Shown: positions 1,525 through 60,001 of the stretch, in pieces
Numbering within the stretch: the stretch's first letter is position 1
Layout of the letters: every line of letters starts with the position of its first letter
Position numbers and translations under genes: made by a program
Notes under the pieces: generated by a model
What the model was told of the DNA's origin: nothing
Seen by the model: the letters and a program-made list of their open reading frames with translations, nothing else
Databases searched by the model: none
Assembly: GCA_964304625.1 (NCBI GenBank)
Contig: OZ199839.1
Coordinates: 6,636,034 to 6,700,033, forward strand
DNA: 64,000 nt
Source of the DNA: Kudoa neothunni
Lineage: Eukaryota; Animalia; Cnidaria
Direction of reading: 5' to 3'

Positions 1525-2907
1525 ATGTTGGTGCTTTCATTATTTTCTCTTTTCTTAGCAATTGTTACCGCCGGTGACTAACCTGATTCGTTATTTATAT
1601 TTATTTATTTTGTATAGAGAGAGCTCTACCTTCTTATGAAAAAGATGCAGGTCAGCCACCAGCCTGGTTGGCGGATGATGCCGAAAAAGCAAAGGCCGCT
1701 GTAGAAAGATGGTATATTGACAAAGATGACGCCACTTGCAAACCTTTTATTTATCTGGGGTCCCTCGGAAATTTCAACAACTTTGTTTCAAGATCTGCTT
1801 GCAACGAACATCGTACATTGCGCATAATTTATTTTAGCGTTTAATATGGAAATAGTAAAATTTAAACCAGAAGAACAAGCGGATGCTTGTGGTCAACCCA
1901 AAGCAGATGGAAATTGTGGTTTAAACGGGCGATAGAATGCTAAAGAGATGGTATTTCAACAAGGATACTGTCGAAGGAAAGACAGCCGCTTGCCACAGCT
2001 TCAAATACAACGGATGTGGTGGAAACGCAAACAACTTTAAATCAGAGTTGGAATGCAAACAAGCTTGTCAAAGTGATTCTCGCATTAATACATAGAATGT
2101 TTGAAATAAAATATTGAACAAATGATACAATTAATTCATATTAATGTTAACAGATAACGTAAATGGTGGAATGTCTCAAGGACCATTCGACGCTAACACC
2201 ATGACAGCTACTCCAAATGTATTTGATTGTAAGTTTTTACCCCAAGTAAAAACTGCCCAACCAAAAATGGGAATTGTTCCCCACAAAGACGGAAATAGAT
2301 GTGTTTATGCTGCTATTGGAGCGACAGCAACGAGAGGATTTTTCGACGATTTACCAACATGTGTAAAGGCTTGCATAAGTATATAATACAAAATAGTCAA
2401 TATACTATTTATCTCAAATAGGAAATAAAGTTGCAGCATGCGACGCTACAGGCCCATATCAAGTTCCATCAGAGTCAGCAGTCACAGATGGTGTAAATGA
2501 GTACTTCTACTTTAACAAAACCCTAGCATTATGCTTACCCTTTATGTCAAAAACAGTAACAGAAACCACAAACATTAACGATGGTGCATTAAACATATTT
2601 AGCTCTGTTGAGCTTTGTGCAAGTTTCTGTCCCGCAAGTATTGATTAAATTGATAATAATATTTAATTTAAATAAAGTTGCTCAAATTGGCCAATTAACT
2701 GCAGTGGAAGCTTGCAAACTCCCAAAAGCTGGAGAATCAAGTGACACTGATACATACAAAATTAGTAGACATTATTATGACCATACTGCAACGACTGAGC
2801 CAAAATGCAAGGGATTTACTTTCAACGGAAAAGACATGAATCTGAATAATTTCAAGGATAAAAATGACTGTGATAAAATTTGCAGGGATCCTTTGTCAAC
2901 CTCCTAG
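1525..2907 (+). CDS. Secreted five-Kunitz-like-domain protein, paralog 1 (6 exons; one +1 frameshift at ~1927-1929)
   Basis: Manual splice model: exons 1525-1573, 1618-1812, 1856-2072, 2154-2378, 2422-2637, 2678-2907; phase-1 GT-AG introns of 44, 43, 81, 43 and 40 nt. Signal peptide MLVLSLFSLFLAIVTA. Kunitz motifs [36 protein letters not shown] and F.FNG...NLNNF...DC..IC. An extra G in 'aacgggcgatag' relative to the paralogs gives a premature TAG. Confidence 0.85.
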
Positions 2908-3513
2908 TCAAATCATCTAATTCTATATTATTATAGTTTAACTTATTTACGAGCTTTAATCTATTGATTATATTATACGTTATTACTTTTGAGATTTTCA
3001 GTCGTCAAAAGTATACAATTATCCATTAATGTACTGATTATAGTAACTATTTATTTAAAAAATTTAGTCATACTTCAAAAAATGAGGATGAATCAAGATT
3101 TATCCACTAAGGACGCAAAAATTACCCCACAAAATTTTTCATCCGATATAAATATGTTTATTAAATAAATTTCACTAATAATAAAATAATATATTTTAGA
3201 GTATGTTTAAGTTAAAAATAAACTATTGGAGAGTAGTTCTCATTATTCAAATTATGTTTCATTTATCTAATAGTATCACTAGGTTGTTATTATTTAGTTG
3301 ATTCAGTTGTTCCATTATTGAAAATGATAATAAAATAATGGAAATATAAGTTTTAAAAATTAATATAAAACTAAAAAAAATTTAATGTGATCATCATATT
3401 TGTTTGACGTGTGTTTTGTAACCAAGTCTGAAATTTCAATCCGAACGATTAATTTTTTCTGAAGAGTGTGAGCAAATATTAAATCTGGGTCTTTTGATTT
3501 CGGATTCATTTTA

Positions 3514-3810
3514 GACAGTGGCTGTTCTCATCGAAACAAATAACTCTTCCGTTATAGATGATATTTCAAATGTTAATTCGAATTTAGCTATTTTTAATCT
3601 TATTTTTTATGTAAAAATTGTTTGAAAATTTAAAGAATAAAAATTCAACACTTTGTTTGTCCACTTTACACTGTTCAATACGTACACTCACATTTCTTGA
3701 GCCTAATATTGTGTTATATAAACATTTTAATTGAAATGAAAATTAAAAACATTTACTATTAAGTAGAAACTGTTCCTTTCGTACATTCTTGTGTCACCCA
3801 CCATGTTTGA
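3514..3810 (+). repeat. Dispersed repeat (transposon terminus); second copy at ~60328-60630
   Basis: About 300 nt of direct similarity, from GACAGTGGCT.TTCTCAT.GA.AC.AATAACTCTTCCGTTAT to CATTCTTGTGTCACCCACC. Confidence 0.75.
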
Positions 3811-3865
3811 AATTCGGGGATGGCAATTTCGATCGTGCGCCGCCTTTTCGTTCGTTTTCCTTTAA

Positions 3866-4345
3866 TTGTTCTCCATTATGATGAATATAATTGAAGTGAA
3901 AAACAAAATTGAGAAAGCGGAGCTTTTTCTTTGGAAAAAGTCCTCCATTCGAAGCAAAGAATGGGAACATTTTCTTCATATTTTCGAGAGACATCAGGAT
4001 GAATCGTTCCAGATCCCGTTTGTTATACGCATTAGATGCAATATGATTATTTCACATAATTCTCTTAACGGAAATAGAAAAATTATAGACCATATCTCAA
4101 TATGCACTCCTCGGTTACCGATTGTTCAATTTACTTCTATCCCGACTGCATTATCTATACCAGAAAAGAATCTTTTACATGAGAAGATTTCAAATTTTGT
4201 GGTCGATACTCTAAGCCCTTTCAAGATCGTCGAAAATAAAAGTTTTATCGATTTGATTGAGTATGCGTATAATTTGGGTGGTAAACATGGAAGCAGAACC
4301 CTCCTACAGGCGGCATCAATAATTAATTGGTTAACAATTAATTGA
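3866..4345 (+). mobile_element. hAT (Hermes/hobo-like) transposase N-terminal remnant
   Basis: BED-finger-like SKEWEHF...RC...H and Hermes dimerisation-like VVDTLSPFKIVENKSFIDLIEYAYNLG; truncated. Confidence 0.6.
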
Positions 4346-4449
4346 TTTCTAAATTTTTTTAATTGCAAAAATTGATTGCAAACGTAAAAATTAATTTTTG
4401 ATGATCCCTGATCTACAATGTTATGTGGAACATTATTCTATTAACATTA

Positions 4450-5400
4450 AGCGATAAGAGTAGAAAAACTTTACATGAAACACTTTTGTTTGTCAATTTT
4501 TGGAGGGCGAAACTGATAACAATCTTCATCCCGACATTTATTTTTGGATGAGGAAGTAGGTTATGCGATTTATGCGCTTCGTTAATTGTTTGAAGTATGT
4601 TGTGTTAATTTCACAAAAAATATCTAATACTTCATGCTGCTGATCTAACTTTATGGGGGCCTTTCATCGTGACTTGGAGTGTTATATCAACCTCTATTTT
4701 CTTCTTAAGAATGCCGTCTGTATCTATCATTGTAATAGGATCAGAAGTTGGGTGGATTTCCTAAACAAGCTTAAAATGGTAGGTATAGCTATTTTTCCTG
4801 TTAAACATATCTTGAGTGTTTGAAAAATATGCACCTGTTCTGAAGAAATGTTGCTGATCGATTTTAAGCATGCATATGCAAATCTTCCAAGAAATACATT
4901 TTGTAAAATGTCGGTTCGCCTTAGTCTTATAGCTACGATGATCCAATTCCATGGCCAATTTGACCCTAAATCTTAAAGCAACCACAAATCCTGATTGGTT
5001 GAACTAAGATGAACGCATTAGTTTGAAAAGTGGCCTTGTATTATGTAGTTGTCTTTGAATATGCTTGTGGAAGTATTTTGAATTTTTTCGTCCGCAATTT
5101 CCAAGATTTTTCTTGTGACGAAATTTCGTTGGTAAGCATTTATAAGAATTCATGTTAAAAATTTAATCTACCTCATTGTTATAGGTATGATTCAACTGAA
5201 CAAGCCAATGAAAGAATTCAAGTAAAAATTCAATTTCGGATTCTATATCCTTTTATGCGTTGACTGTATAGTTGTATTCCGCTGCAATGCTTCACGTATA
5301 CGTCGATTTCTATTTGCTTTTCTTTGTTTCTTAAAACCAAGGATGTATCAAATAATTATGATGAGATTTAAACGAAATGAGGTTCATTTGTTTGTATTAT
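4450..5400 (-). mobile_element. Decayed Helitron Rep fragment
   Basis: Reverse-strand broken frames resemble the Helitron Rep motifs QQY.VDAY.KIE, PDLF and D.VARVF..KL. A similar remnant (HIRN.NN...LHG) lies at ~60667-60882. Confidence 0.5.
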
Positions 5401-5719
5401 AATTTTTTAAATTTATTTATATTAGGTTTTTTCATTTTCTCCTTAAATGTAAAAACTACTTACGTTATTAAGTAAAATTTTGTTGTTTCGTTTATGTCTG
5501 TTTATTTCGCGCAGTAAATTTTCGGCTGATTTTTATGCTATTAACATATTGAAACGTTTATTGTATTAAAAAAATATAAATTAAAGCAGTTTTATTTCAA
5601 TTTTTCCCCTGAATTAAATATTCCCAAACCTCGAGAGCAGCCGGGTATTACGGCTAGTTTATTATAAAATCAGAAGGTTTTCACGTGTGCAAAGGACGAA
5701 TTTGTGGAGGTGGATACTC

Positions 5720-7338: not shown

Positions 7339-10300
7339 TTAATCTCTTTTTTTCTTCAGTACTACGATTCCAACTATCGCTGCGACCACAACCACGGCAG
7401 CGCAAGCAATAGTGATTCTAAACACAGTTAGTTCAAATATGCAGCATTCAAAAATGTTTACATAAATTTGGTTTTATCGCTAAAAAAATATTAAATTAAA
7501 TAAAAAACATATTACTAAGCTCACCCTGAACTACTCTTGGCACCTACGATACATAACATTAAATCACATTGTGAACAAATAATATACCTTGTTGTATGTC
7601 AGCACCTCCAAAAATTGTATTATCTTGAGCACTGTAAACAGTCACATAATAGTTATTTCCATCAGGTAAATTATTTATTTTGAATTCTTTACAGGTCACA
7701 AAAGCAGCACATCTGTCCACGTTTCTTCTCATGCAAGATCTTACTACTGCATTAGACTTGACACTACTGTTTACGTAACTCCCATTTGCAATTTTGATTC
7801 ATCGTTCATGCCAGCTGGAAGTGTGGTGGTTACAATGAAACTGTTCCCATCACGTGTAATGACGACTGATATCAATTTTGAGAAGTCAGTTGGGTTTAAT
7901 TGTGGTGCACCTAATGTAAGATTCGTTTAAGAAATTCTTAATAGTATCGTTCATCGAAGCGTTAATTGTAGTACTTGATTCTAGGATATGCTCTTTTTCT
8001 GAAGATTTTCCGATAGCTGTGACTAAAATTTTGTATGTATTTGCTGCTTCATACTCGGGAAATGTTATGGAACTGCAAAGCGGATTTGATGAACAGGTGT
8101 TTATGCTGTTAGCGGCACCAGCAAGCTGTGTATCTGAAGTGCCCGGAACTGAAGATTTCGCTGCCGTCATTGGGCCACCATCTGCTACCATTGGCACAGC
8201 AATTCTAGCTATGTTGAGATCTACAGAACTTGAACTGGAAGGAGTATCTGAAACGGGATTTGGTGCTACTGGAGTGGCAACAGGTGTCGTTACTTTCGGC
8301 ATCACTGGACATGTGTAATAGTCCGATGTAATCGTTACCACTCTTCTTTCGTATGACATAACTACAAGTTGCACTTGGATCTGCAGCATTTAATCGTGCC
8401 CTCAATGACAAACCATCCAATGTGATCTTGTGTGTTATCGTTAATGTTGTCAATGCTATTAAAATTTAAATAGCAAATTATAACTTCAATAACCTGTTCG
8501 TATATCTGGGTAATCTTTTATGCCGTAATTCTTATCCGCGATCACCCTGATGTCATAAGGTGCGTTTGGCTCAAGGTCTTCTATCGTAACTTGTTCACTG
8601 CAAATTCCTCTACATGGGGTATCGCCATTTGCATTTCGCGTGGTAAAAGCTATCTAATCCAGCCGGACTCACCAAATACTCACAGGTAGGTTCATTTTTC
8701 TTATCTTGAAGTGAAGTTGTGGTAGCAGCCATAGCTGTAAGAGAGACTGTCGTGTCTGTCTTCGTAGGATCGGTAGTTCCATAATCTTTGTTGTCTCCTT
8801 TTGCTATATAATTCGTTATTTTTTAAAATAAGTATATTGATTTACTTGTTCTTATGAATATATATTCTTTGAAATCATTCGGATCAGTAATGCCAACAGG
8901 TGTAATTTCAATCATGTAAGCTTTTCCCCGCTGCAAGTCCTTGAAGCACCGATTTTGTGCAATCAGTTCTGCACTTATTATTACTACCATTGCTCTCAGA
9001 GCTGCACGTTGTCTCTGATGGAGTTGATGGTTTAATGTTGTCTGCGAAGTAGGGCTTAAGAGTGCATCCAGTCATTTTTGGATCAGAGCCCTCTTTTAAT
9101 AATGGACCTTCAAACGTCACACCAGTCTTGGTATAACGGGAAAGCAAACCTTCGCCTGATTCAGTAAATGCTAAAGAAAATATTAAAAAATGCATGTTAA
9201 TACAAGGATTACCATATTTAGTTTGTTCGTGGCCGTCCAACTCAGCACCTGTAACCTTTATGTTGTTATGCCTTGTTTGGATTAAAATTTTATAAATCCT
9301 TTTGTCAGGAATGCCATTGAGTTCGATATACTTACAAGGTGCATAACAACTCTTGTCGGTTCCACCACAAACTGAAGTATACGATGGATTTGTTTGCTGA
9401 CTGTTGACCATCTTTAATACTGAATAGGCATATTTCAGACGACGGGGAGTTAGTGAATTTTAATTCCCCACTTTGTTTTCATTTTTAGACACAATAATAA
9501 AACTGGGGCTTATAAATGTCTATGTTTTTCTTCATATATTGATTAGGCATACTGTAAAAGAAACTGGGATAATTTTCGCACCTTACTTCGTAATGCGGTA
9601 ACAACAAATCTAAATCAACTTTGTTTTCTGTATTATCACTAATACAATCTGCACCTTTGTCACCATTTACATATTTAATATCTTTATAATAAATAGGACA
9701 ATTAACTATTGCACCATGTTTTTGTTGCAATTTTCAGCTTATTGTCTGAACTGTCTGTAGGACACAGTAATTTGTGGATTAACCAACAACGCTAAATTTA
9801 ATTTATGTTTTATGTCAAATTTAGTTGATTTACATATTGAATACCCAAATACTTTTGCTTCTGCTCCGTGAGTTTTCGTTTTAACATTAGTAGTGGTATC
9901 GCCTACGTAGACGAATATGTATTTGGTTCTTGGTGACAGCTTCTTGTAATCAATTGTATTCTGATTAGTAGCACAATCGACAACACACCTGTTCTCAGAA
10001 TCTTCAACTTTAGCAGTGCAACCGTCGATATCCTTAAATTCAGCTGTTGTTGGAGCACTAGGATTAGCTGTAATTTCCGCCTCGTTAGATCGCTTTAAAA
10101 GGCATTTTTTGTCTGCTGTTCCATATTCAGAGCCTCCAAGGTTGAGTTTAATTTCGTCGGAATTACGAGATGTACCTTTCACAATCTGGTATTCAGTGTT
10201 TTTTGTTGGAGCTGGAGCGGCAGCAGTAGAACTCGGACTTGCAACAGCATTGGGATGTGCTTGATATTAAATCACCTAAACTTGTATTCGTATTAAAATT

Positions 10301-14836: not shown

Positions 14837-16228
14837 ATGTTGGTGTTTTCGTTATTTTATTTTTGCTTAACAATTATAACAGCTGGTGACCGATTTAATT
14901 CATTATTTAAATTTATCTATTTTGTAAAGAGAGAGCTTTATCTTCGTATGACAAAGATGTAGGTCAGCCACCAGCTTGGTTGGCGGATCAAACCGCAAAA
15001 ACAAATGCTGCTGTCGAGAGATGGTATATCGACAAAACTGATGCTACTTGCAAACCTTTTACCTACCTTGGATCCCTCGGAAATTTCAATAACTTTGTCT
15101 CTAGATCTGCTTGCAATGAGCATTGTAAATTCAGTTATTACTCAATCAATATTAAATGCGGAATAGTAAAATTTAAGCCAGAAGAAAAAGTTGCTGCTTG
15201 TAGATTAACTAAAAATGATGGAGCTTGTAGTCTAGAGGGAGATAAAATGCTAACAAGATGGTATTTCAGTTCAGATACCGTTGATGGCAAAGCAAACTCA
15301 TGCCACAGTTTCAAATACAACGGATGTGGTGGAAATGCAAACAACTTTGACACAGAATTGGAATGCAAACAAGTTTGCCAAAGTAATCGCATCATAAAAT
15401 AAATCATGCTTAGATAATCAAATAATTATAACACAACATTTCAAAAACATTTTTATTAGACAAAGATAACGGACCAATGACAGGAGCCTTTGATGAAAAA
15501 ACCATGACTGCTACCCCGAATAAATTTGATTGCACCTTTGTACCTGAAGTTAAAACTGCAACACCAATGATGGGAATTGTCCCTCATAAAGACGGAAATA
15601 AATGCGTTTATGCTGCTGTTGAAAATGGTGCCAAGAGAGGATTTTTCCTTGAATTACCAACTTGTGTCAAGACTTGCATAAGTATAATTTTAAAAAATTA
15701 TTAAATATTTTATTTTTTCAAACAGAAAATAAAGTTGCAGCGTGCAAAGCTGACGGTCCACATCAAGTAGAAATCACCACTGGTATCACACAAACATCAG
15801 ACGTAACTACATATTACTATTTCAATAAAACCTCAGCATTATGCTTACCTTACATGTCAAAAGCACCAACTGATGCTAGTTCTATCATTGGACGTCGGGG
15901 CATTGAACATATTTAGCTCTGTTGAGCTGTGTGCAAGTTTCTGTCCTGCAAGTATGATAGTAATTTCGAATAAGTTGTAATAATGTTAATGTAGCTAGTC
16001 ATATTGGTCAGTTAACTGCTGTTGAAGCCTGTTTGCTACCAAAAGTTGGAGAGTCCATCTGATGCTGATAAATACAAAATTCAAAGATTTTATTATGACA
16101 AGGATGAAAAAACTGCAACTCAACGATGCAAAGAATTTTCTTTCAATGGAAAAGACATGAACCTGAATAATTTCAAAACTAACGAAGATTGCAAAGCTAT
16201 TTGCGAAACTCCATTGAATCCATCATAG
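14837..16228 (+). CDS. Secreted five-Kunitz-like-domain protein, paralog 2 (two +1 frameshifts, ~15890 and ~16056)
   Basis: Same 6-exon structure. Signal peptide [16 protein letters not shown]. Domain 2 is [24 protein letters not shown]...[26 protein letters not shown]. Single extra G ('attggac') and extra C ('gagtccatct') versus the paralogs. Confidence 0.8.
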
Positions 16229-19292: not shown

Positions 19293-19586
19293 TGTATATA
19301 TAGTAGATAGTAAATAGATAAAACCGCATGCCATTAAACTTATTATCGTAATTTATTTGAACCAGATTTATTTTTTATTCTTTTGTCAACAACTTGATAA
19401 AAAAATATATTACTTTAATAACTGGTGAAAATTCAACAGAATATGTTTTCATGAACTGAACCACCCTACGTTTATTTTTATTCAGAATAATCGTTTTCCG
19501 ATCTATGTATTATTATAGATCAATTCATTTGTACCGATTTATATTCGTTTAAATACTCGTTAGATAGTAATTATTTTTATTTCATA

Positions 19587-21197
19587 ATGAATTTACTACA
19601 TTGGACAACTTATGCTTTGTTTTTAACCGCCTGCTCTCTTGGTAATCATTTAGCGTTGAAAAGAGTCATATATGTTTCATAGAAAAAGATTTGGATTCAT
19701 ATGTTGATCTAAATGTTAAAAATACAGCTTTGAAAGATGATTTCAAGGTGAAAAGATATAGAATCATCCATGCTACTGGAATATGCGAAGAATTTGATTA
19801 CAAAGGAAAAGGAATGAACTTCAATAATTTTAAATCATTAGAAGAATGTGAAAATCATAGTAACATTAATATTAGTCGTTCTTTTATAACTTCATTAAGA
19901 AAAAAAGACAAAAGATGATGTATTTAAGGCAGTTAAAGCAGTTAAAGTTGATACAAATCCAAATTCTGAACCTACAATATCGTGCACAGGAGTAGCCGTA
20001 AACAAATACTACCTCAAAAAAACTATAACCGATGGCGTAACCTCTTATTCTTGTACAAATTTCGAGTATAAGGGTTGTGGAGGTGGACAGAATTTCTTCA
20101 ACTCCCAGTCAGAGTGTCAACAAGCAAAAGCCGGTACCTTATTGAATTACTTTGAATTTTAGTAAATTCATTAATAGCCGTTGTTGGAGGTGAAAAAAAA
20201 CCGTTTTCATTGCGGCATTCACCCAGCGTTAGAAGTTAATTCATATAAAATGATTATGGTCGTTGCTGATATGTCAGCACATAAATGTGTACATGCCGTG
20301 GTAAATGAGGGTGAAACAATGGGAGTATTTGATTCAGTGCAACAATGTAACCAAATATGTTTAAGTAATTTGTGAAATTAATATTAGGAAAATAATTGGT
20401 AATGATTAAGGTTCTCCCACCGACATGAACCCTAAATGTAACTCAAGGATTTCCCAAATGAAATGTGATAGGAAGATTGTCCAAAGATATTTTTACAAAA
20501 AATCATCCAAGGTCTGTGAGATTTATGAAACAGAAGATTGCAAGCATCCAGACAATGCAAATACCTTTGAAACATTAGACGACTGTGTTGGTTCATGTCC
20601 TACCCACACAGGTACTCCTCCATAGTTAATCCTCCTCATTAATAAATAATTTTTAGGTTTAACTTCGGATGAGGAAGATGGTATTACGTACAAAAAAGCT
20701 AATGACATTTGCAGACTGGGCAGAAGTGAAGGTGTTGGGCATTTATTTTTAGCCAGATATTATTTCGATCGTCATACAAAAACGTGTATGCCATTCATAT
20801 ACAGAGGAATTGGAGGAAATGACAATAGATTCAGAACCAGGGATGAATGCATGGGAGTGTGTTCTGGTAAGAGTTCTGAAATCTCGAAACCTCCATCGTA
20901 TATAACCATATCTATTTTCAATATAACGTTATTAATAGTGTGAGAGATCCACCAGTTGAGGACTCTATCGATTCCATCACTACAGCTGCTACTGAAACTA
21001 CCACCACCACCGATGTTTCCTCAACTGAAGCCTTCGCGTCTGTAACCACCACCCCCAATGAAACATTAGCTACTGAATCTGATGAAGCTACGAGCGAAGA
21101 TAACCAAGGTGATAAAAATATAAACGAAAGTGCTCCAAATAATGGATTTTTAGACCCAAATACCCAAGAGGAGCCATCTCATGGAGTCCCAGCATAA
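19587..21197 (+). CDS. Divergent secreted five-Kunitz-like-domain protein with C-terminal Ser/Thr/acidic mucin-like tail (7 exons)
   Basis: ATG 19587 with signal-like MNLLHWTTYALFLTACSL. Five phase-1 introns (~40-46 nt) separate the domains, and a 41-nt phase-2 intron (20898-20938) joins the tail VRDPPVEDSIDSITTAATETTTTT... Domain 4 has all six Kunitz Cys; domain 5 reads RYYFDRHTKTCMPFIYRGIGGNDNRF. One +1 in the A-run at ~20193-20200. Confidence 0.8.
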
Positions 21198-22284
21198 AAC
21201 TTTTAGCAAAGTATCGATAATAATGGTTAGGACACATCTTATAGTTGATGAATGTGACATATGACTTACTTTCGTATTTCATTGGATACTTTATAGTCGA
21301 ACTTATATTTGTTGACTAAATTTTGTTCCTATAATTTCGAATGTTCATTGTATGATAAAAGAGGAAAGTGGCTATATCTCAGGGAATGAATATCTATAAA
21401 ACTAATGCATATTTTTCATATTATCTAATATTTACATAATTTTCTGTATGTTTTGAAAAATTTTAATAATAAGAAATTTTCAGTAGTGCAACCATCATGA
21501 GTCCATCAATAATTTAATGTAATCACCATATAATTTTAAGTATTTCGATAAAAAAAGCAGTATTCTCTTTTGAACTAGTCTATATAAATAATCAATTTTT
21601 AGTCTAAAAGTTATTTTAGCTTCCGTTGTATTCTTTAAGGTTGGAATGGTAAAGATGAGTTTTAACATGTTTATATATGGAATATGTTTTGTTTCCTTCG
21701 TTGATCTTTATATTGTCATAATATGTGGATAATCAAAATTTCGATTATCACAAACATTACCCTCCTTTTATAAAAAATTGTGTATTCATCGATGAATGAA
21801 GTCATATGAATAGCGGTTTTTAAACGTGGGTCGTCCTATAATAGAAAATAATAAATTAATTCTTACAACCATTATGACAAGAAAAAACAAATTGAAATAG
21901 AAACAGTTGGGTTCAAGGATCTTTCCCACACTTTCACGTTCCATCTTCCCACAAGTAATCCTTTTCTACTCATCATTCCAAACAACAAAATCCTTGTATT
22001 CGATTTCACATTCATCCTACCATTCCTACTAACGACTACTTTCCCTTACTTTATCCTAAACCCATTTTTCGACTAAATGATAAAAGAAATTACACTGACA
22101 ACCTTATCCATACTTTCCATTCTTGCCATCGGAAACGATCCTATCTCCTCTCTGCAACAATTCCCACAACGCGGCTGCGGCGTTAAAAATGAGCCGCTCT
22201 TATATAAACACACCAGTTTACTTAATTCTTTAACCTATCTATTTTTCTGCCTTAGTTCCTATTTGTATTTTTTGCGCTGATACC

Positions 22285-31306: not shown

Positions 31307-32683
31307 ATGCTGTGGTTTTCATTATTTACTATTTTCCTCACTAATGTTACAGCGGGTGATTGATTTAATTCTTTATTTATATTGTTTTATTTTTAAAAAG
31401 AGAGAGCTTTACCTTCTTATGAAAAGGATGTTGGCCAGGCCCCAGCTTGGTTGACGACTGATGCTTTGAAAGCACAGGCTGCTGTAGAAAGATGGTATAT
31501 TGACAAAGATGACGCGACTTGCAAACCCTTTACTTATCTTGGGTCTCTTGGAAATTTCAACAACTTTGTTTCAAGATCTGCTTGCAACGAGCATCGTATA
31601 TCGCGTTAAATTTATTTAAACATTTAATCCTGAAATAGTAAAATTCAAACCTGAAGAACAAGCGGATGCATGTGCATTGCCACAAAGAGATGGGGATTGT
31701 GGCTTAATTGGCGATAAAAGAATAACAAGATGGTACTTCAGCAAGGATGCTGTTAACGGTGTGTCAGGCGCTTGCCACAGCTTTAAATATAATGGATGCG
31801 GTGGAAACGCAAACAACTTTGAATCAGAAAAGGAATGTAAACAAGCTTGCCAAAGTAATTCGCATTAATGCATTCCTTCTTGATTTAATATTAATATAAT
31901 ATTTTTTCACTCATCTTTACAGACAACAAAAATGGTGGAATGGATTCTGGAGCTGCAGAAAATACTATGACCGCTACTCCAAATGAATTTGATTGTAAAT
32001 TTGTACCCGAAGTCAAATCCGCCACACCTGTAATGGGGATTGTTCCCCACAAAGATGGGGAAAAAATGCGTTTACGCTGCTGTTGGAAAAGATGCAACAA
32101 GAGGATTTTTCAAAGAGTTACCAAACTGTGTGAAAACTTGCATAAGTATAATTTTAAACATTATTCAATATCTTATTTATTTCAAACAGAAAAAAAAGTT
32201 CCAGCGTGCAAAGCTAACGGCCCACATCAAGTAGAAAGCGAAACTGATATCACACTAACATCTCAAGTAACTACGTACTACTATTTCAACAAAACCTCAG
32301 CATTATGCTTACCCTTCATGTCAAAAACAGTTGGAACTGATACTCCGAAAATTGACGATGGTGCATTAAACATATTTAGCTCTGTTGAGTTGTGTGCAAG
32401 TTCTGTCCCGCAAGTATGAACATAATTTCGAATAGAATGTAATCATATTAGTGTAGCTGGTCACATTGGTCAACTGACTGCAGTTGAAGCTTGTTTACTG
32501 CCAAAAGCTGGATTGTCAAGTACCACTGATAAATACAAAATTAGTAGGTACTACTACAATCCATCTGCATCCGGTACTAAATGCACAGCATTTAATTTTA
32601 ACGGAAGAGACATGAACCTAAATAATTTCAAAGATTCAACAGATTGCACAAATATTTGTGAAACTCCATTGAGTACATCATAG
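31307..32683 (+). CDS. Secreted five-Kunitz-like-domain protein, paralog 3 (+1 at ~32057-32060, -1 at ~32401)
   Basis: Same 6-exon structure. MLWFSLFTIFLTNVTA; domain 2 ACALPQRDGDCGLIGDKRITRWYF...GCGGNANNF; ends ICETPLSTS*. Indels are GGGG vs GGG and TT vs TTT compared with paralog 4. Confidence 0.8.
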
Positions 32684-41360: not shown

Positions 41361-42751
41361 ATGTTGGTGCTTTCACTATTTTCTTTTTTCTTAGCAATTG
41401 TTACTGCGGGTGATTGATTTAATTCTTTATTTATATTGTTTTATTTTTTAAAAAGAGAGAGCTTTACCTTCCTATGAAAAAGATGCTGGTCAGCCACCAG
41501 TTTGGTTGACGGATAAAAGCCAACAAGAACAGGCTGCTGTCGAGAGATGGTATATTGACAAAGAGGATGCCACTTGCAAACCTTTTACTTATCTTGGATC
41601 CCTCGGAAACTTCAACAACTTTGTCTCTAGAGCTGCGTGCAACGAGCATCGTACATCTCGTTAAATTTACTTAGGCGTTTAATACTGAAATAGTAAAATT
41701 CAAACCTGAAGAACAAGCTGATGCATGTAAGTTACCGAAAACAGATGGAGGTTGTAGCTTAACAGGTGATAAAATGTTAACAAGATGGTACTTCAACAGA
41801 GATACCGCTAATGGCAATATAAACACTTGTCTCAGCTTCAAATACAATGGATGTGGTGGAAACGCGAACAACTTCGAATCAGAAAAGGAATGTAAACAAG
41901 CTTGCCAAAGTAATTCTCTCCTTAGTTTATAGAATATCTAAAATTAAATACTATACATATATTATGCTTAATTTGTATTTATGCTAACAGATAACAAAAA
42001 CGGTGGAATGGATTCTGGAGCTGCAGAAAATACTATGACCGCTACTCCAAATGAATTTGATTGTAAATTTGTACCCGAAGTCAAATCTGCCACACCTGTA
42101 ATGGGAATTGTTCCCCACAAAGATGGGAAAAAATGCGTTTACGCTTCTGTTGGAAAAGATGCAACAAGAGGATTTTTCAAAGAGTTACCAAACTGTGTGA
42201 AAACTTGCATAAGTATAATTTTAAACATTATTCAATATCTTATTTATTTCAAACAGAAAAAAAAGTTCCAGCGTGCAAAGCTGATGGCCCGCATCAAGTG
42301 GAACCCACGGCTGATATCACAACTATGACAGGTGTATCTACGTATTATTACTTCAATAAAACGTTAGCATTGTGCTTACCTTTCATGTCAAAAACGGCTG
42401 AATCCCCAACCACAAATATTGATGATGGTACATTGAACATATTTAGCTCTGTTGAGTTGTGTGCAAGTTTCTGTCCTGCAAGTACCAAATATACTGATAA
42501 TAATATTTAATATAAATTAAGCTGCTCATATTGGTCAATTAACCGCGGTTGAAGCTTGTTTTCTGCCAAAAGCTGGAGAGTTAAGTGGCACCGGTAAGTA
42601 TCAGATTCAGAGATTCTATTATGATCACTCTGCAAGTGGCGACAAATGTACACAATTCAAATTTAACGGGAAAGATATGAACCTGAATAATTTCAAAGAT
42701 AAAGCTGATTGTGACAAAATTTGCAAGGATCCTCTAACAACAACCGTCTAA
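41361..42751 (+). CDS. Secreted five-Kunitz-like-domain protein, paralog 4 (intact)
   Basis: The spliced frame is open from MLVLSLFSFFLAIVTA to ICKDPLTTTV*, with five phase-1 GT-AG introns at conserved positions. Confidence 0.9.
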
Positions 42752-48999: not shown

Positions 49000-50621
49000 T
49001 ATAAAGGAGGACTGTCGCGTGTGAGTTTTACATAGAAAAGTGCGAATATATAGTGTTTATATTTTTAAAATCTATTCTATTCAAAGTTCCAGTTATATAA
49101 TTTATTAATTTCTCTTAAATAGAACAAATCGTAATAAGACGGATAATTATCGCACATAGCTTTGGTTGAATCCATTTTTTCTTGCTGTTTCATAGGTTGG
49201 TTATTATTATTTGGATTTGTTAACTGAAACTCGATATCTTGCCCAATTGAACTTTGCGCTTGCTTTAATTTGTCTATCAAACAATCAAGCCCAGCGTGTG
49301 ACTGATCAAAGCGGTCGAAGAAATGTCGATTGAAGCTTTCACAACTATTTGTTGTCAATGGAATATTTTTCATCACTCGTTCAAACGAGTTCCAAAAAGT
49401 AGTAGGAAATTTTGAATTTTCTATATATGTTTCGGTGGAATATTTAAAAAATATTCCAATTTTTTCATTATTGAAATTGTTTGAATATTTTTTCAATTTT
49501 TCAAATTCTTTTTGGACGAAATTAGGAGGCAGAAATGATAACGATGTGACCATTTTGAATACGCATCGAAGCTCAATGTTCTTTTGTGCATCTTGTAATA
49601 AACCTATTTTTTGAATTTCCCTCCAAACTGCTTTCCCAAAATGGAAGGTACAAAATTGGATATTTATTGTTTTTGATGCTTTTTCAAAATCAATTATTAA
49701 ATTATCAGGTAATTTAATATGTGGGGTTTCTTTCATTATGTTGATCATAAGGTTATAATCCTCCTCAGTTTTTCCAGGCATTAAAATAAATACTAATGGA
49801 AATACCCTGTTAAAAATTATACCATGGATAACATAGAGTTGATAGAACCCTTTGGGTACAACCTTAAACGTTCCATCGGAGAGCCAAATATTTGAATTGT
49901 TTAAGTGACTCATATTTTCCTCTGTAGAAAATATTATCATTCTTTTTGTGCAGAGGGATCCATTATCGTAAAAACAGAATTTTTTCCCTCTTAATGTAAA
50001 TATTCCCTTGTTTAACAAGTTGGTCTCATTTACAATCGAGATGCTCATCCTTTTTCTCGTGCTTTGGATCAGTTTATAGACCGTTTTTTGTTAAATATTG
50101 GGAGTTCCTCTATTGGTTTTCTGTTGGTGCATTGGTTGTAAACATTGTTCGTAGAATATATCGTTTCTTCAGCAACAGTCCTTACTTCATTATTTAATAA
50201 CACTTTTTTATGTGATTTTCATCAACAGCGTGATTATGCTCGTCAACGGTCACAATTCTACAAATATCCGGCAACAACGAAGTTTGCAACTTACCGCGAC
50301 ATTTTCTTTGCTGGCACCTCCAAAAATTGTGTATCATCATTTGATGTTGTTGTGACGTAAAAATGTTGCTTATAAAGTATTTTGTAGGTATTTCGTATAG
50401 TTTTCAAAAGTATAAACTCCGCCATTATATCTTTGGTTACTAATTGCGCATGTGGCGTTTCGTGGAGTTACAACCAAAAATAATACTTAAAAAGTAAAAT
50501 AATTATTTGATAAAAGTGCAATTAAACCAAATGAAAACCCCAATCTTACAAAAATGCTTAAAAAACGAGTGAAATAACAATGTGTCGCGCATGCGCACCT
50601 CTGGCGAAAACTCGACATGCC
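49000..50621 (-). mobile_element. MULE transposon with a 323-aa transposase ORF fragment (49077-50048)
   Basis: WLSDGTFKVVPKGFYQLYVIHG, IIDFEKA, CTFHFGKAVWR and TTNSCESFNRHF. Same family as the 22-24 kb and 34-35.6 kb copies. Confidence 0.9.
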
Positions 50622-50660: not shown

Positions 50661-50666
<6 letters not shown>

Positions 50667-50964: not shown

Positions 50965-52355
50965 ATGTTGATTCTTGTATTATTTTCTCTCTTCTTAGCA
51001 ATTATATCAGCTGGTGACCGATTTAATTCGTTATTCATATTTATATATTTTGTAAAGAGAGAGCTTTACCTTCCTATGACAAAGATGTAGGTCAGCCACC
51101 AGCTTGGTTAGAGAATGATACGCTCAAACAACAGGCTGCTGTAGAAAGATGGTATATTGACAAAGCTGACGCAACTTGCAAACCTTTTACTTATCTTGGA
51201 TCTCTTGGAAATTTCAACAACTTTGTTTCAAGATCTGCGTGCAACGAGCATCGTATATTGGGTTTAATTTATTCAGGCCTTTAACACTGAAATAGTAAAA
51301 TTCAAACCTGAAGAACAAGTCGGTGCATGTGGGTTAGAGAAAGCAGATGGAGATTGTAGCTTAACAGGAAATAATATGTTAACAAGATGGTACTTCAAAA
51401 AGGAAGCTGTTGACAGTAAGACGAACTCTTGCCACAGTTTCCAATACAACGGATGTGGTGGAAACGCAAACAATTTTAAATCAGAGAAGGAATGCAAACA
51501 AGCTTGTCAAAGTGATTCTCTCATTGCTACACAGAATGCTCAAAATAGAATATTGAACAAACAATACAATTAATTTATATTTATTCTACTAGATAACATA
51601 AATGGTGGAATGGACCCAGGAGCAGATGCCAGCACGATGACAGCTACTCCAAATGATTTCGATTGCAAATTTGTACCCGAAGTAAAAACTGCCGAACCTA
51701 AAATGGGAATTATTCCCCACAAAGACGGAAACAAATGCGTTTATGCTGCTGTTGGAAAGGAAATCAAGAGAGGATTTTTCACAGATTTACCAAACTGCGT
51801 CAAAACTTGCATAAGTACACAATTCAAAATTGTTAATAAACTATTAATCTCGAGTAGAAAATAAAGTTCCAGCTTGCAATGCTGAGGGTCCATATCAAAC
51901 TCCATCAGAAACTGATGTTACAACTGGTGTTAGTGAATACTTCTATTTCAACAAAACCTTAGCATTGTGTTTACCCTTTATGTCGAATACCCCAACTGGG
52001 ACGAATAAGATTGACGATGGTACATTAAACATATTTAGCTCCGTTGAACTCTGTGCAAGTTTCTGTCCCGCAAGTATAGACGTAACTTCGAATAAAGTGT
52101 AATAATATAAATTAAGCCGCTCATATTGGTCAATTGACTGCAGTTGAAGCTTGTTTACTACCAAAAGTCGGAGAAACAAGTGGAAATGATAAATACAAAA
52201 TTCCTAGATTTTATTATGACAAGGATGAATCGAACGCTAACACCGCCAAATGCAAGCAATTTAATTTTAACGGAAGAGATATGAACCTGAATAATTTCAA
52301 AGATTCCGTAGATTGCAAAGCTATATGCGAAACTCCATTTTCAAATGCATCTTAA
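50965..52355 (+). CDS. Secreted five-Kunitz-like-domain protein, paralog 5 (intact, 378 aa)
   Basis: Introns of 44, 43, 81, 43 and 43 nt leave 1137 nt (379 codons including stop), from MLILVLFSLFLAIISA to ICETPFSNAS*. Confidence 0.9.
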
Positions 52356-54957: not shown

Positions 54958-55074
54958 TATTACTCATTATGTACACATGAAATATTTAATAAATGACTCC
55001 GATACAATTATTTTAAGCATACAATTCCATACAATATCTGCTATAAAATGAGACCTAAATTATAAATTTGAATA

Positions 55075-56067: not shown

Positions 56068-56169
56068 TATAATCAAACTAATAAAAACTAATTAGATTTA
56101 TAATATTTCAGATTACATTAAATTTTTTGTGACAAATATAATCAACTTCCAGAAATAATTCTTTTTAAA

Positions 56170-56990
56170 TTTATTACGGAATATTACAATCCCAAATTAT
56201 GATTAAAATAACAAGGAATTAAAAAAAATTTTACTTGTTGGTAAGTGTCAATGTAACATTCATCTTTTAAGGTTTTGTATATGTTTTTAGAATAATAATT
56301 CCACCAGGTAGAGTTATCATAACTTATTATTTCTATTAATTCCCTATCCTTGAGCGTTCCCGCCCAAAATGTCGATGATGGTATTAGACTGTTATCAAGT
56401 ACATCTATTAAGTTTATATCCAAGGAACAATCAGTAGGGATGTCAATAGAAGCTTTTAATGGCGCTCTGGACAATGTATCCGCGTTTAGGTTATCATTAC
56501 CCTTGCCATAGACGAGAGGCTAATTGAAACCAGCCATATAAAGTGGCCATCGGGCCATTCTTTGTGATGTTACGTGTGAGAATTCTTTAATTTTATCCAG
56601 TAATGTAGTCAGTGGTTTGTGATCAGTGAATATCGTAAATTTTCGACCGTCCAACATCTGTTTAAATTTTATTATTGCCTTAAATACTGCTAAGGCTTGA
56701 TTATCGATAACACAGTAGTTTTTCTCTGCATCACCATAGGTTTTTGGCGTGAAAGCTATTGGCCTTTCAACGCCATCAATAATTTATGAGAGAACCCCAC
56801 AGGTTCCCACATCAGAAGCATCCGTGGCTAGTACAATTGGGTTTTGTGGGTCGTAATGGTTGAGTACTCGGTTTCTAGATATGAGATTTTTGGCTTTAAC
56901 AAAGACTTTGTGTTGATTTTTTGTCCATTTTCATTTACAATCCTTTCGCAATAGCGAATTTAGAGGTTCAATAACTTCAAACATATGTGA
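56170..56990 (-). mobile_element. Ty3/Gypsy pol fragment (RNase H)
   Basis: IVLATDASDVG, RPIAF, FTIFTDHKPL, RMARW and ADTLSR on the reverse strand. Confidence 0.85.
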
Positions 56991-56999
56991 AAATTGTAG

Positions 57000-58221
57000 T
57001 TCAGATTGTATACATAATATCGACGAATCTGCATTATTCTACCAGCAGCAGAGAGGTATACGTAGTTTGTTAAAGTTTTGATTTATTTTGTAAGTAAAAG
57101 CTTTGTAGTTCCACCAGAGAAAAATATAAAGGGGACAAAACAATCTATGAAGCGAGTAACTATTTTGTTAGGTGCCTCAATGAATGATGAAAAGCTTGAA
57201 CCGCTAATAAGCGACAAACTCAAAAACCCTTGTTGTTTTAAGGATATTAAAAAATTTCCTGCCATATGAAAACAATAATAAATGTTGGATGAATAGTGAT
57301 TTACTCTTGAGATATATAACCAAGCTTAATCACTTACTTGAAAAAAGGAATAAACATGTGTTTTGTTTCTTGATAATGCATCCTGCCATTGTAAAAATAA
57401 ATTTGAGAAATATAAAAATGGTTTTTCTCCCCCAAAAAACTACGAATGTTTTACAACCTCTTGATCAGGGGATAATATATTCATTTAAATCTGCCTACAA
57501 AAGAGTTACGATTAAGCGATACATTGCTCGTGTTAAAACAGGTATTGATCCCGTCCCTCCGAACATACTAGAGGCAATGTTTCTTATAGAAGATTCTTGG
57601 GATACGGTTGATCCAGAAACAAATTATAAATTGTTTTAAAAAAAGCGTATTTTCCTATTGATGAATTTTCATCTATACCACTAAGCGATAATTAAAATAA
57701 TAGATGTATCTAATAGAGAAAGCAGTGATACCATATGCCCAGAGAAAATTAATGACAAAATAAACGAAATGATTCAGGAGGAGGATGATCTTTGCTGCTT
57801 ATATGATGACTATTCCACATTATATTTAGATATTAGGAATAATTTGGTGGATTGTGTTAAGTATGGCGAAGGATCTGGTGAGGAAGTGCTTGAAGATAAA
57901 TCTGAGGATACCCCTGTTCCGAATTTCAAAGAGGCTATTGATTCCATCAGCGAACTTAAAAAATTCTTTCTGAAAAATGATGTTGATCGACTCAGAAATC
58001 TTTCAAATCGTGAGAACGACGTATACGATATCATGTGGAAAAATATTAAACAATCGAAAATAACAGATTTTTTCAAACGTTAGAATATAAATATTGTTTA
58101 GTCTACTATATTGCATCTCATCTTTATTCAAACATGTTTTCTCGTTGATTAAGAGTTATAAATGTAATATTTAAATGACGATTGCACACTTAACAACGTG
58201 TATAAAATCGGTTGCCTACTG
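57000..58221 (+). mobile_element. pogo/Tigger 3' half
   Basis: NIDESAL, KRVTILLGAS, VFLP..TT.VLQPLDQGII and KQSKITDFF; right TIR ...GGTTGCCTACTG. A similar 3' remnant ends at ~40018. Confidence 0.8.
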
Positions 58222-58601
58222 CATATCAATTAAACGAGTAATATTATCAGATAAATTTACGCTTTGAACACCACTTTATAATATTTTTTTAAGCTTGCAC
58301 ATTTTCTAACATCTACCTGCTCAAGTAATAATTAATTACATTCAATGAAATTAGGAATAACATTAAATGATCCGTTTGGGTGGATAATAATTTTTTTTCG
58401 TGCAGGATAAATCCTGATTCATCCTCATTTTATATAGTATAGCTATATTTTTTCTATGAAAAGCTACTATATTTAACGCATTAATTAATTCTACGTATAT
58501 TTATAAGGACATTAAACCTCAAAATTAATGTCATAAAATAACTAGCATACTAAGGTCCATAAATATGTCAATCTATATTAATATGAAAATAGATGATTTG
58601 A

Positions 58602-60001
58602 CTAGGAGGTTGCCAGAGGTTCAATGCAAATTTTGTTACAATCTTCTTTAGATTTGAAATTATTCAGGTTCATGTCTTTTCCGTTAAAATTAAATGACTT
58701 GCATTTTTCAGTGCCAGCGTTCGATTCATCTTTGTCATAATAAAATCTAGTAATTTTGTATTTATCATTTCCACTTGTTTCTCCGACTTTTGGTAGTAAA
58801 CAAGCTTCAACTGCAGTCAATTGACCAATATGAGCAGCTTAATTTATATTATTACACTTTATACGAAATTACTTTCATACTTGCGGGACAAAAACTTGCA
58901 CATAACTCAACAGAGCTAAATATATTCAATGTACCATCGTCAATTTTTGGATCACCAGTTACAACTGTTTTTGACATGAAGGGTAAGCATAATGCTAACG
59001 TTTTGTTGAAATAATAGTATGTAGATACAGTGGATGCATCTGTGGTGTCACCACTGGTGGTGATTTCAACTTGATATGGACCCTCAGCATTACAGGCTGC
59101 AACTTTATTTTCTATTTTAGATATATAATTTATTTACTACAATGAGTTTTATACTTATGCAAGCCTTGACGCAGTTTGGTAAATCACCGAAAAATCCTCT
59201 TGTGGCAGTCTTTCCAACAGCAGCATAAACGCATCTATTTCCATCTTTGTGGGGAACAATTCCCATTTTGGGTTCGGCAGTTTTTACCTCGGGTACAAAT
59301 TTGCAATCGAATTCATTTGGAGTCGCTGTCAATTTTGTAGGGTCTTCCACACCCGTTACCCCACCGTTCCCCTTATCTATAAACATAATTACAAAATAAT
59401 TTTTATCATTTTGATTGATTTTAAACTCTGCATTAAAAAATGAGAGAATTACTTTGGCAAGCTTGTTTACATTCTTTCTCTGTTGCAAAGTTGTTTGCAT
59501 TTCCACCACATCCGTTGTATTTGAATTTGTGACATGAAGCTTGTTTGCCTTCGACAGTATCCTTGTTGAAGTACCATCTTGTTAACATTTTATCGCCTGT
59601 TAAGCTACAATTTCCGTCTGCTTTCTCTAACCCACATGCACCAGCTTGTTCTTCAGGTTTGAATTTTACTATTTCAGTATTAAACGTTTAAACAAAGTAA
59701 ACGAAATATACGATGCTCATTGCAAGCAGATCTTGATACAAAGTTGTTGAAGTTTCCAAGAGATCCAAGATAAGTAAAAGGTTTGCAAGTGGCATCCTCT
59801 TTGTCAATATACCATCTCTCGACAGCAGCCTGTGCTTTTAAAGCATCAGTGGCCAACCAAGCTGGTGGCTGACCTGCATCTTTGTCATAGGAAGGTAAAG
59901 CTCTCTCTTTTTAAAAAATAAAACAATATAAATAAAGAATTAAATCATTCACCCGCAATAACAACTGCTAAGCAGAGAGAAAATAATGAAAGCACCAACA
60001 T
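58602..60001 (-). CDS. Secreted five-Kunitz-like-domain protein, paralog 6 (intact, inverted orientation)
   Basis: The reverse-strand spliced frame is open from MLVLSLFSLCLAVVIA to ICIEPLATS*, with the same intron positions and phases. Confidence 0.9.

What the first reader, a model, noticed from the sequence alone, without database searches (positions are those of the whole stretch)
1525..60001. Dispersed array of secreted penta-Kunitz proteins with constant frameworks and hypervariable, CDR-like loops
Seen: six paralogs (~375 aa, signal peptide, five Kunitz-like domains) keep long near-invariant frameworks, e.g. [59 protein letters not shown] and [10 protein letters not shown]. Variation is concentrated in short loops. 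The D1 reactive-loop position reads ADDAEKAK / ADQTAKTN / TTDALKAQ / TDKSQQEQ / ENDTLKQQ / ATDALKAQ. The D4 loop reads VPSESAVTDGVNE / [15 protein letters not shown] / VESETDITLTSQVTT / VEPTADITTMTGVST / TPSETDVTTGVSE / VEITTSGDTTDASTVST. The D5 hairpin reads HTATTEPKC / [10 protein letters not shown] / NPSASGTKC / HSASGDKC / KDESNANTAKC / KDESNAGTEKC. Loop length changes are in-frame. Known: multi-Kunitz secreted proteins such as tick penthalaris act on host proteases, and Kunitz toxins act on channels. Inference: the Kunitz fold has been repurposed as a scaffold for a variant effector or antigen repertoire, probably in a parasite.
Basis: partly seen in the sequence, partly recalled or inferred. 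Interest (0 to 1): 0.85.

Follow-up and report, generated by a model that had tools for sequence, protein, structure and literature searches.

The report
Expanded secreted multi-Kunitz family in Kudoa
The window holds six copies, plus one divergent seventh, of a roughly 150-member family of secreted five-domain Kunitz-type proteins from the tuna muscle parasite Kudoa neothunni, with rigid cores, fast-changing exposed loops and pieces swapped between copies.

Summary
Six paralogous six-exon genes lie in the window. Each has a signal-peptide exon plus five domain exons, and all introns are phase 1. Every quoted motif and loop string is present.

Three copies (g1, g2, g3) carry single-base homopolymer frameshifts as assembled. 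An otherwise identical intact twin (L008) and read contigs suggest these are mostly consensus errors in a roughly 7x HiFi assembly.

Pfam supports Kunitz for D1, D2 and D5. D4 is borderline. D3 could not be shown to be Kunitz.

The genome matches the published Kudoa neothunni assembly (Myxozoa), so "a parasite" is right. The family has about 150-170 members on all three chromosomes. The same five-domain architecture occurs in two external contigs from other samples, taken here as related species.

Frameworks are under strong purifying selection (omega about 0.06-0.12). Loops as a whole are near neutral (0.5-1). A site-class test finds 4-6% of codons with omega about 3, in loops of D4 and D5, not significantly in D1. 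Paralogs are mosaics of exon-scale exchanged blocks.

Best reading: a diversifying secreted effector or binding-protein family, analogous to tick salivary Kunitz expansions. An antigenic-variation repertoire is not shown. The scan noted similar arrays elsewhere in this genome.

The parts
1525..2907 (+). g1: six-exon gene (signal peptide + D1-D5). Exons 1525-1573, 1618-1812, 1856-2072, 2154-2378, 2422-2637, 2678-2907. One homopolymer frameshift in exon 3 (about 1908-1914) as assembled.
   Evidence: The twin L008 shows only four differences over 1,165 alignment columns, one being that indel, and its frame is open.
14837..16228 (+). g2: exons 14837-14885, 14930-15124, 15167-15382, 15460-15681, 15726-15951, 15995-16228. 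Two homopolymer frameshifts as assembled (exon 5 at about 15888, exon 6 at about 16053). Intron 2 happens to be open in frame.
   Evidence: In the coding part, exon 6 differs from L008 only by that single-base length difference.
31307..32683 (+). g3: exons 31307-31355, 31401-31595, 31639-31854, 31923-32145, 32190-32413, 32457-32683. Two homopolymer frameshifts as assembled (exon 4 at 32054-32063, exon 5 at about 32400).
   Evidence: Every read contig laid over 32054-32063 is one base shorter than the assembly there, including the contig that keeps g3's own variant at 31996.
41361..42751 (+). g4: intact, 378 aa. Exons 41361-41409, 41456-41650, 41694-41909, 41991-42212, 42257-42481, 42522-42751.
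50965..52355 (+). g5: intact, 378 aa. Exons 50965-51013, 51058-51252, 51296-51511, 51593-51814, 51858-52073, 52117-52355.
58602..60001 (-). g6: intact, 382 aa. Exons (minus strand) 60001-59953, 59906-59712, 59668-59453, 59376-59155, 59111-58881, 58837-58602. It has an inverted, degenerated partner (L007) just beyond the window end.
19500..21200 (+). g7: divergent member of the same superfamily. It has D1-like, D2-like and D3-like exons, then a six-Cys exon (about 20410-20620, seen by inspection only; no profile or Pfam hit was obtained) and a profile-matched Kunitz exon (20650-20940), followed by a Thr/Ser-rich tail. Exon borders were not refined.
1288..1524 (+). Upstream block shared by the paralogs. 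Homology begins about 135-240 bp before each ATG. Candidate common promoter or 5' UTR.

Best explanation
The six genes are one subfamily of a lineage-specific family of about 150-170 secreted five-domain Kunitz-type proteins in the myxozoan fish parasite Kudoa neothunni.

Architecture. Each domain sits on its own phase-1 exon. The Cys patterns below assign residues to canonical Kunitz positions by spacing, and the disulfide pairings are inferred from that.
- D1: Kunitz remnant with one disulfide (C3-C5).
- D2: canonical six-Cys Kunitz.
- D3: four-Cys module of unproven fold.
- D4 and D5: Kunitz domains lacking the C2-C4 bridge.

Selection. Core residues are held by strong purifying selection. 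The segments matching the Kunitz binding loop, the beta-hairpin turn and the secondary loop drift at near-neutral rates and change length. A few percent of their codons are positively selected.

Sources of new variants. They arise by duplication and by exon-scale gene conversion or unequal crossing-over between paralogs.

Inferred function. These are secreted binding proteins or atypical protease inhibitors acting at the host-parasite interface. Loop diversification retunes or broadens their targets. They are not classical trypsin inhibitors, because P1 of the only canonical domain is Ser, Gly or Glu.

No dedicated diversity-generating machinery is implied.
For: Gene structure and conservation. 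All five GT/AG intron pairs are kept in 22 paralogs, and 17 of the 22 have open frames.

Kunitz assignment: Pfam D1 43, D2 56, D5 45 and D4 20-22 bits.

Organism: 40.26 Mb in 3 large contigs plus one of 18.2 kb. C2 is 12,040,071 bp. GC is about 31% and introns are about 45-90 nt. A single (TAAACC)n array lies at the end of C2. These match PMC12239612.

Family size: at least 150 D1-type exons and 148 D3-type exons.

Same architecture and Cys pattern in two external contigs: L074 at 74% identity and L073 at 41% identity with 20% GC.

Selection: NG86 omega 0.23-0.25 overall, with pS 0.3-0.6 inside frameworks where pN is about 0.01. The ML codon model gives omega 0.12 for frameworks and 0.51 for loops. 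M2a versus M1a gives 2dlnL 47.7, or 40.4 without gap-adjacent columns, with omega2 about 3 and p2 4-6%. By domain: D4 14.4, D5 22.2, D2 5.9, D1 1.8, D3 2.3. The largest null value in 14 simulations was 3.4.

Mosaicism: L008 matches g1 for exons 1-5 and g2 for exon 6. g3 and g4 share D3 and two introns at 98-100% identity against 55-83% elsewhere.
Against: There is no expression, localisation or activity data. No RNA run holds the locus, and the genome paper reports that very few transcriptome reads map to the parasite.

The signal peptide is judged by inspection only.

Recombination within exons can inflate site-model tests. Per-exon trees reduce this but do not remove it. The M1a/M2a code is my own, checked only by its agreement on M0 omega with IQ-TREE and by simulation.

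Region-level loop omega does not exceed 1.

Five of the 22 close paralogs are broken as assembled. One of them, L007, carries multiple lesions, so some copies are decaying.

The fold of D3 is unknown.
Confidence: 0.65

Rival explanations
1. It is a true antigenic-variation repertoire. One or a few members are expressed at a time on or from the plasmodium. Switching and cassette exchange between paralogs produce new variants that escape fish antibodies.
For: The family is very large for a genome of about 5,300 genes (PMC12239612). Blocks are exchanged mosaic-fashion between paralogs. Loop codons are positively selected. A shared upstream block could serve common regulation. Variant-surface-protein families have been proposed for another myxozoan (bioRxiv 10.64898/2026.02.11.705288).
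Against: By inspection of the C-termini there is no transmembrane or GPI-like tail. The arrays are chromosome-internal, not subtelomeric. No expression data exist. Most loop codons are only neutral.
Confidence: 0.12
2. The family serves the parasite itself. It might control the parasite's own secreted proteases until host death, or act as a structural or packaged component of spores and polar capsules. Loop variability would then be mere relaxed constraint in a redundant family.
For: Region-level loop omega is 0.5-1. Kunitz proteins are regarded as core nematocyst or "venom-like" components retained in Myxozoa (PMC9144971, PMC8684318). The role of parasite proteases in post-mortem muscle softening is from general knowledge and was not checked here.
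Against: The site-class test rejects pure neutrality plus constraint. About 150 copies, with architecture maintained and frameworks at omega about 0.06-0.12, argue for selection on each copy. P1 residues (Ser, Gly, Glu) are unusual for a housekeeping serine-protease inhibitor.
Confidence: 0.2
3. Part of the apparent repertoire is artefact or decay. Uncollapsed haplotypes or assembly chimeras inflate the copy number and create the mosaics, and several copies are pseudogenes.
For: The assembly came from about 7x HiFi of an infected fish and contained haplotypic duplication (PMC12239612). g1 and L008 are near-identical copies 87.8 kb apart, with 100% identity over most exons and introns. Five close paralogs carry frameshifts, all within C2:6.63-6.70 Mb. 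L007 has several lesions.
Against: Most paralog pairs are only 75-83% identical, with unrelated spacers, so they are real loci. 17 of 22 are open and all keep their splice sites. Three HSP70 genes are open over about 2 kb each. Read contigs do not support the g3 exon-4 frameshift.
Confidence: 0.1

Closest known systems
Tick salivary multi-Kunitz proteins (penthalaris with five domains, ixolaris, boophilin) and the expanded tick Kunitz families
   Same: Secreted proteins of a parasite with tandem Kunitz domains. Large lineage-specific expansion. Conserved disulfide core with fast-evolving loops. Frequent loss of individual disulfides. The D3 and D4 exons' nearest feature-space clusters are tick salivary Kunitz clusters, but the scores are weak (0.79-0.83).
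   Different: There is no orthology; matches are at the generic Kunitz level only. Here the five-domain layout is fixed and each position has its own reduced Cys pattern. One position (D3) is not recognisable as Kunitz. The host is a fish muscle cell rather than blood, and no anticoagulant role is implied.
Myxozoan Kunitz "toxin-like proteins" reported from transcriptomes (PMC9144971; PMC8684318)
   Same: Same phylum. Those papers report that most myxozoan Kunitz proteins carry three recognisable KU domains. Pfam also sees three domains above threshold in these genes (D1, D2, D5).
   Different: Those surveys found 39 sequences across all species, an overall omega of about 0.06, and only one episodically selected site. 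They reported no copy-number expansion, no five-domain architecture and no Kudoa arrays. Orthology to their sequences was not tested here.
Two-disulfide Kunitz domains such as conkunitzin-S1 (from general knowledge)
   Same: D3-D5 lack the Cys pair equivalent to BPTI 14-38 and keep the other two bridges.
   Different: Those are single-domain toxins acting on channels. Here the reduced domains are fixed positions within a five-domain protein.
Helminth secreted Kunitz families (Echinococcus EgKU, Fasciola FhKT; cited within PMC9144971 and PMC8684318)
   Same: Parasite-secreted multigene Kunitz families with atypical P1 residues and non-trypsin targets.
   Different: Those are single-domain proteins in small families. 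No mosaic exon exchange has been described for them.

Membership tests
Kunitz/BPTI domain (PF00014) | Profile match above Pfam's gathering score (21 bits) | tested here: met
   Met for D1 (43.1), D2 (56.4) and D5 (44.8). D4 is borderline (19.9, 20.7, 22.1). D3 gets no hit, and none of 70 D3 homologs matches even at E<=10.
Kunitz/BPTI domain (PF00014) | Six Cys with spacing C-x8-C-x15-C-x7-C-x12-C-x3-C | tested here: inconclusive
   Met only by D2. D1 keeps C3 and C5. D3, D4 and D5 keep C1, C3, C5 and C6, with loops of altered length. Cysteines are missing as whole pairs.
Kunitz/BPTI domain (PF00014) | Kunitz fold (beta-hairpin plus C-terminal helix) for the unrecognised D3 | tested here: inconclusive
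   Two AlphaFold2 runs (19- and 70-row alignments) gave pLDDT 46. hhalign against D2 gave probability 1-2%. There was no PDB sequence hit. Language-model neighbours are all Kunitz clusters, but only at 0.79.
Canonical serine-protease-inhibiting Kunitz | Basic or large hydrophobic P1 after C2, with the C14-C38 bridge holding the binding loops | tested here: not met
   P1 of D2 is Ser, Gly or Glu in all 20 paralogs. The other four domains lack the bridge. Activity itself is not testable here.
Variant-antigen / antigenic-variation gene family | Large family with recombining members and positively selected variable regions | tested here: met
Variant-antigen / antigenic-variation gene family | Surface anchoring (TM or GPI signal) | tested here: not met
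   The C-termini are short and polar (for example ...PLSTS...PLTTTV), by inspection. No predictor was run.
Variant-antigen / antigenic-variation gene family | Mutually exclusive or switching expression | not testable with these tools
   No RNA run holds the locus.
Kudoa neothunni genome (organism assignment) | Assembly metrics and the telomere motif reported in PMC12239612 | tested here: met
   40.26 Mb against the paper's 40.2. C2 is 12.04 Mb against an N50 of 12.0 Mb. Three large contigs plus one small one. GC about 31% against 30.4%. (TAAACC)n at exactly one contig end. No named sequence was compared.

The most novel reading that the evidence does not exclude
Kudoa uses a non-immunoglobulin, five-module Kunitz scaffold as a combinatorial recognition or evasion repertoire. 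About 150 germline copies reassort whole domain exons through their symmetric phase-1 introns, and selection acts on CDR-like loops. This would give a myxozoan a variable ligand or antigen system functionally comparable to the variant surface families of protozoan parasites.
Probability: 0.15. Interest if true: 0.85.

Novelty: new variant of a known kind. Interest (0 to 1): 0.6.

Why it matters
Kudoa species spoil commercially important fish, and some cause food-borne illness, yet their host-interaction molecules are almost unknown.

A single family that makes up roughly 3% of a gene set of about 5,300 genes is a prime candidate for the parasite's main interface with the host. It is secreted by inspection, kept intact by selection, diversifying in exposed loops, and shared in architecture with two external contigs from other samples, taken here as related species.

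No paper in the searched library describes the family. The genome paper does not mention Kunitz.

It also offers a natural set of about 150 five-domain variants for studying how far the Kunitz fold tolerates loss of disulfides and loop remodelling.

Tried and rejected
Organism guesses. A Strongyloides-clade nematode was rejected: no Col_cuticle_N was found and HSP70 is at most 78% identical to any named protein. An arthropod or mite was rejected: no Chitin_bind_4. Orthonectid, dicyemid and Sphaerospora molnari were considered and dropped in favour of K. neothunni.

D1 profile search of 1.84 billion representatives. It was swamped by generic multi-Kunitz proteins. Only one true D1 homolog (P0128) appeared among the 150 listed.

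D3 as Kunitz. Pfam, hhalign, a PDB profile search and two AlphaFold2 runs all failed. No fold search was run on the low-confidence models.

Reads. Only k-mer contigs of four runs from one sample were available, and paralogs co-map. They argue against the g3 exon-4 frameshift but cannot settle the other sites or show expression.

ARAGORN in bacterial mode found no tRNA on C4. In mitochondrial mode it gave 14 doubtful calls.

All searches were done exon by exon, by reference. Inside scripts, broken genes were read with X at each break.

Full report
WHAT IS THERE. Aligning the six 1.4-kb stretches and checking junctions gives the same six-exon structure in each. Exon 1 (49 nt) encodes Met plus a 15-residue hydrophobic stretch. 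Exons 2-6 each encode one domain of about 65-78 residues. All five introns are GT..AG, 42-90 nt and phase 1.

The genes are g1 1525-2907, g2 14837-16228, g3 31307-32683, g4 41361-42751 and g5 50965-52355 (all +), and g6 60001-58602 (-). The products are 376-382 aa.

Only the genes and about 135-240 bp upstream are similar between loci (75-82% DNA identity). The 8-17-kb spacers are unrelated.

As assembled, g1 has one frameshift and g2 and g3 have two each. All five lie in short homopolymer runs. I read these genes only with X at each break. No other stop codon appears.

A locus 87.8 kb upstream (L008) shows only four differences from g1 over 1,165 alignment columns spanning exons 1-5 and their introns, one of them that single-base length difference. 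Over intron 5 and the coding part of exon 6, L008 is identical to g2 except at g2's exon-6 break. L008 itself is open.

Read-derived contigs from the source sample never show the assembly's version of the g3 exon-4 run. That includes the contig carrying g3's private variant at 31996. Paralogs co-map, so this is suggestive and not conclusive.

The assembly was built from about 7x HiFi coverage. Three HSP70 genes are nevertheless open over about 2 kb each. One neighbouring copy (L007) has several lesions and looks truly degenerate. I conclude that most breaks in g1-g3 are probably consensus errors or very recent mutations, and that some family members are pseudogenes.

ARE THE DOMAINS KUNITZ? 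Pfam PF00014 scores are D1 43 bits, D2 56, D5 45 and D4 20-22 (cut-off 21). D3 gets nothing.

By inspection, and assigning Cys residues to canonical Kunitz positions by spacing:
- D2 has all six Cys.
- D1 keeps only C3 and C5.
- D3, D4 and D5 keep C1, C3, C5 and C6.
So Cys are missing in whole pairs. This agrees with two other first-stage notes on this stretch.

D3 (C-x23-C-x19-C-x3-C) could not be shown to be Kunitz:
- None of 70 D3 homologs hits PF00014 even at E<=10.
- hhalign against D2 gives 1-2% probability.
- There is no PDB sequence match.
- Two AlphaFold2 runs gave pLDDT 46.
- Its nearest language-model neighbours are all Kunitz clusters, but at a weak 0.79.
"Penta-Kunitz" is therefore three solid domains, one borderline and one unproven.

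P1 of the only canonical domain is Ser, Gly or Glu in all 20 paralogs examined. That is atypical for a trypsin-type inhibitor.

WHOSE GENOME. The assembly has 40.26 Mb in three large contigs (17.15, 12.04 and 11.05 Mb) plus one 18.2-kb contig. Window GC is about 31%.
- Nematode and arthropod cuticle families are absent.
- HSP70 is at most 78% identical to any named protein.
- The figures match the Kudoa neothunni assembly of Weber, Paulini and Blaxter (PMC12239612). That assembly has 40.2 Mb, N50 12.0 Mb, three chromosomal scaffolds plus a circular mitochondrion, GC 30.4% and median intron 49 nt. It carries a (TAAACC)n telomere at one chromosome end.
- That repeat occurs in this genome only at the last 540 bases of C2.
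The host is yellowfin tuna. The paper does not mention Kunitz, and no paper in the library links Kudoa with a Kunitz expansion.

FAMILY SIZE AND RANGE.
- PF00014 gives 950 first-look candidates.
- The D1 profile gives at least 150 scored matches.
- The family-specific D3 profile gives 148 matches out of 173 candidates.
- The matches lie on all three chromosomes and are often in tandem arrays.
This gives about 150-170 five-domain genes, against 5,316 predicted genes in the paper.

Twenty-two close paralogs (the six here plus L007-L022) all keep the five splice-site pairs, and 17 are open. A seventh, divergent member with a Thr/Ser-rich tail lies at about 19.5-21.2 kb in the window.

Outside this genome, three short contigs from other samples carry the family:
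- L001, with about 71% DNA identity to more than 40 loci here.
- L074, whose D3 is 74% identical, followed by D4 and D5.
- L073, a 3.3-kb contig of 20% GC carrying the signal-peptide exon and all five domains with the same Cys pattern at 41% identity.
The architecture is therefore older than the species. Earlier transcriptome surveys reported "three KU domains in most myxozoans" (PMC9144971). Three is what Pfam sees in these genes, so this is probably the same family with its size and full layout unrecognised.

SELECTION.
- Nei-Gojobori estimates give omega 0.23-0.25 overall.
- Inside the frameworks, pN is about 0.01 while pS is 0.3-0.6. The constancy is therefore purifying selection and not recent homogenisation.
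- In the hypervariable windows, pN is about equal to pS, and only one 8-codon window slightly exceeds it.
- An ML codon model gives omega 0.12 for frameworks, 0.51 for a broad a-priori loop set and 0.27 overall.

I then fitted M1a and M2a with per-exon trees, using my own code. Its M0 omega of 0.265 agrees with IQ-TREE's 0.273.
- 2dlnL is 47.7, with omega2 2.9 and p2 5.7%.
- After dropping gap-adjacent columns, 2dlnL is 40.4.
- By domain: D5 22.2, D4 14.4, D2 5.9, D3 2.3, D1 1.8.
- The largest null value in 14 M1a simulations was 3.4.
- High-posterior sites lie in the D2 C1-C2 loop, the D4 long loop, the D5 hairpin and the helix start.

So a small class of loop codons is positively selected. 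Most loop codons are neutral, and the D1 loop is not significant. Intra-exon recombination remains a caveat.

MOSAICISM. Several pairs are 98-100% identical over some exons and introns but 55-85% elsewhere:
- L008 combines the g1 and g2 sequences.
- g3 and g4 share intron 1, D3 and intron 4.
- g6 and L007 share the 5' half.
- L018, L019 and L020 share blocks.
With every domain on a symmetric phase-1 exon, exchange of whole modules keeps the frame. This is ordinary gene conversion or unequal crossing-over. No special machinery is indicated.

INTERPRETATION. Shown:
- a very large family with a conserved architecture and a signal-like N-terminus;
- purifying selection on the cores;
- neutral-to-positive evolution and indels in the loops that form the binding surfaces of Kunitz domains;
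- modular exchange between copies;
- a parasitic host organism.

Inferred: secretion, and a role as diversified binding proteins or atypical inhibitors at the host interface. The closest analogue is the tick salivary Kunitz expansions.

Not shown: expression, localisation, targets, or any antigenic-variation behaviour. No membrane anchor is apparent.

The scan's first stage flagged at least six similar arrays elsewhere in this genome. That fits the genome-wide counts but is not independent evidence.

VERDICT. This is a real, probably undescribed, lineage-specific variant of a known theme. The "variant repertoire" reading is plausible in its weak form (a diversifying effector family) and unproven in its strong form (CDR-like antigen system).

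Noticed in passing
window 19500-21200 (+): A seventh, divergent five-domain gene. Its fourth exon has six Cys and looks like a canonical Kunitz domain by inspection only. Its fifth is a profile-matched Kunitz exon. A Thr/Ser-rich, mucin-like tail follows. It belongs to a different subfamily from the six.
   Followed up: partly
window 49080-50048 (-): A 323-aa ORF with a MULE transposase domain (26.9 bits, just under the 27.6 cut-off). MULE expansion has been reported as a shared trait of myxozoan genomes (bioRxiv 10.64898/2026.02.11.705288).
   Followed up: no
G000:C2:6549550-6551550 (L008) versus window g1 and g2: An open gene almost identical to g1 over exons 1-5 and to g2 over exon 6, lying 87.8 kb upstream. 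It may be a recent recombinant duplicate, an uncollapsed haplotype or an assembly chimera.
   Followed up: partly
G000:C2:6702100-6704100 (L007), just past the window end: An inverted partner of g6, identical in the 5' part. It carries three frame breaks and a rewritten patch that puts a stop where the conserved Trp codon lies. It is probably a true pseudogene.
   Followed up: partly
about 135-240 bp upstream of each ATG (e.g. window 1288-1524): Conserved upstream blocks shared by 15 fetched paralogs (L007, L009-L022). Candidate common promoter or 5' UTR.
   Followed up: partly
G000:C2:12039536-12040069: (TAAACC)n telomeric array at one contig end only, as described for K. neothunni.
   Followed up: yes
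G000:C4 (18,219 bp; L005 + L006): Presumed mitochondrial genome with 44% GC, far above the nuclear 31%. The open frames are highly divergent and there are no convincing tRNA genes.
   Followed up: partly
window 7886-8389 and 8908-9411 (-): Two 167-aa ATG ORFs with no Pfam match. Another first-stage note calls this region a Cys-braced FN3-like repeat protein.
   Followed up: no
L073 (Logan SRR31175926, 3.3 kb, 20% GC): A complete five-domain homolog next to a gene with a ribosomal S4 domain, in a very AT-rich contig. Probably another Kudoa or multivalvulid species.
   Followed up: partly
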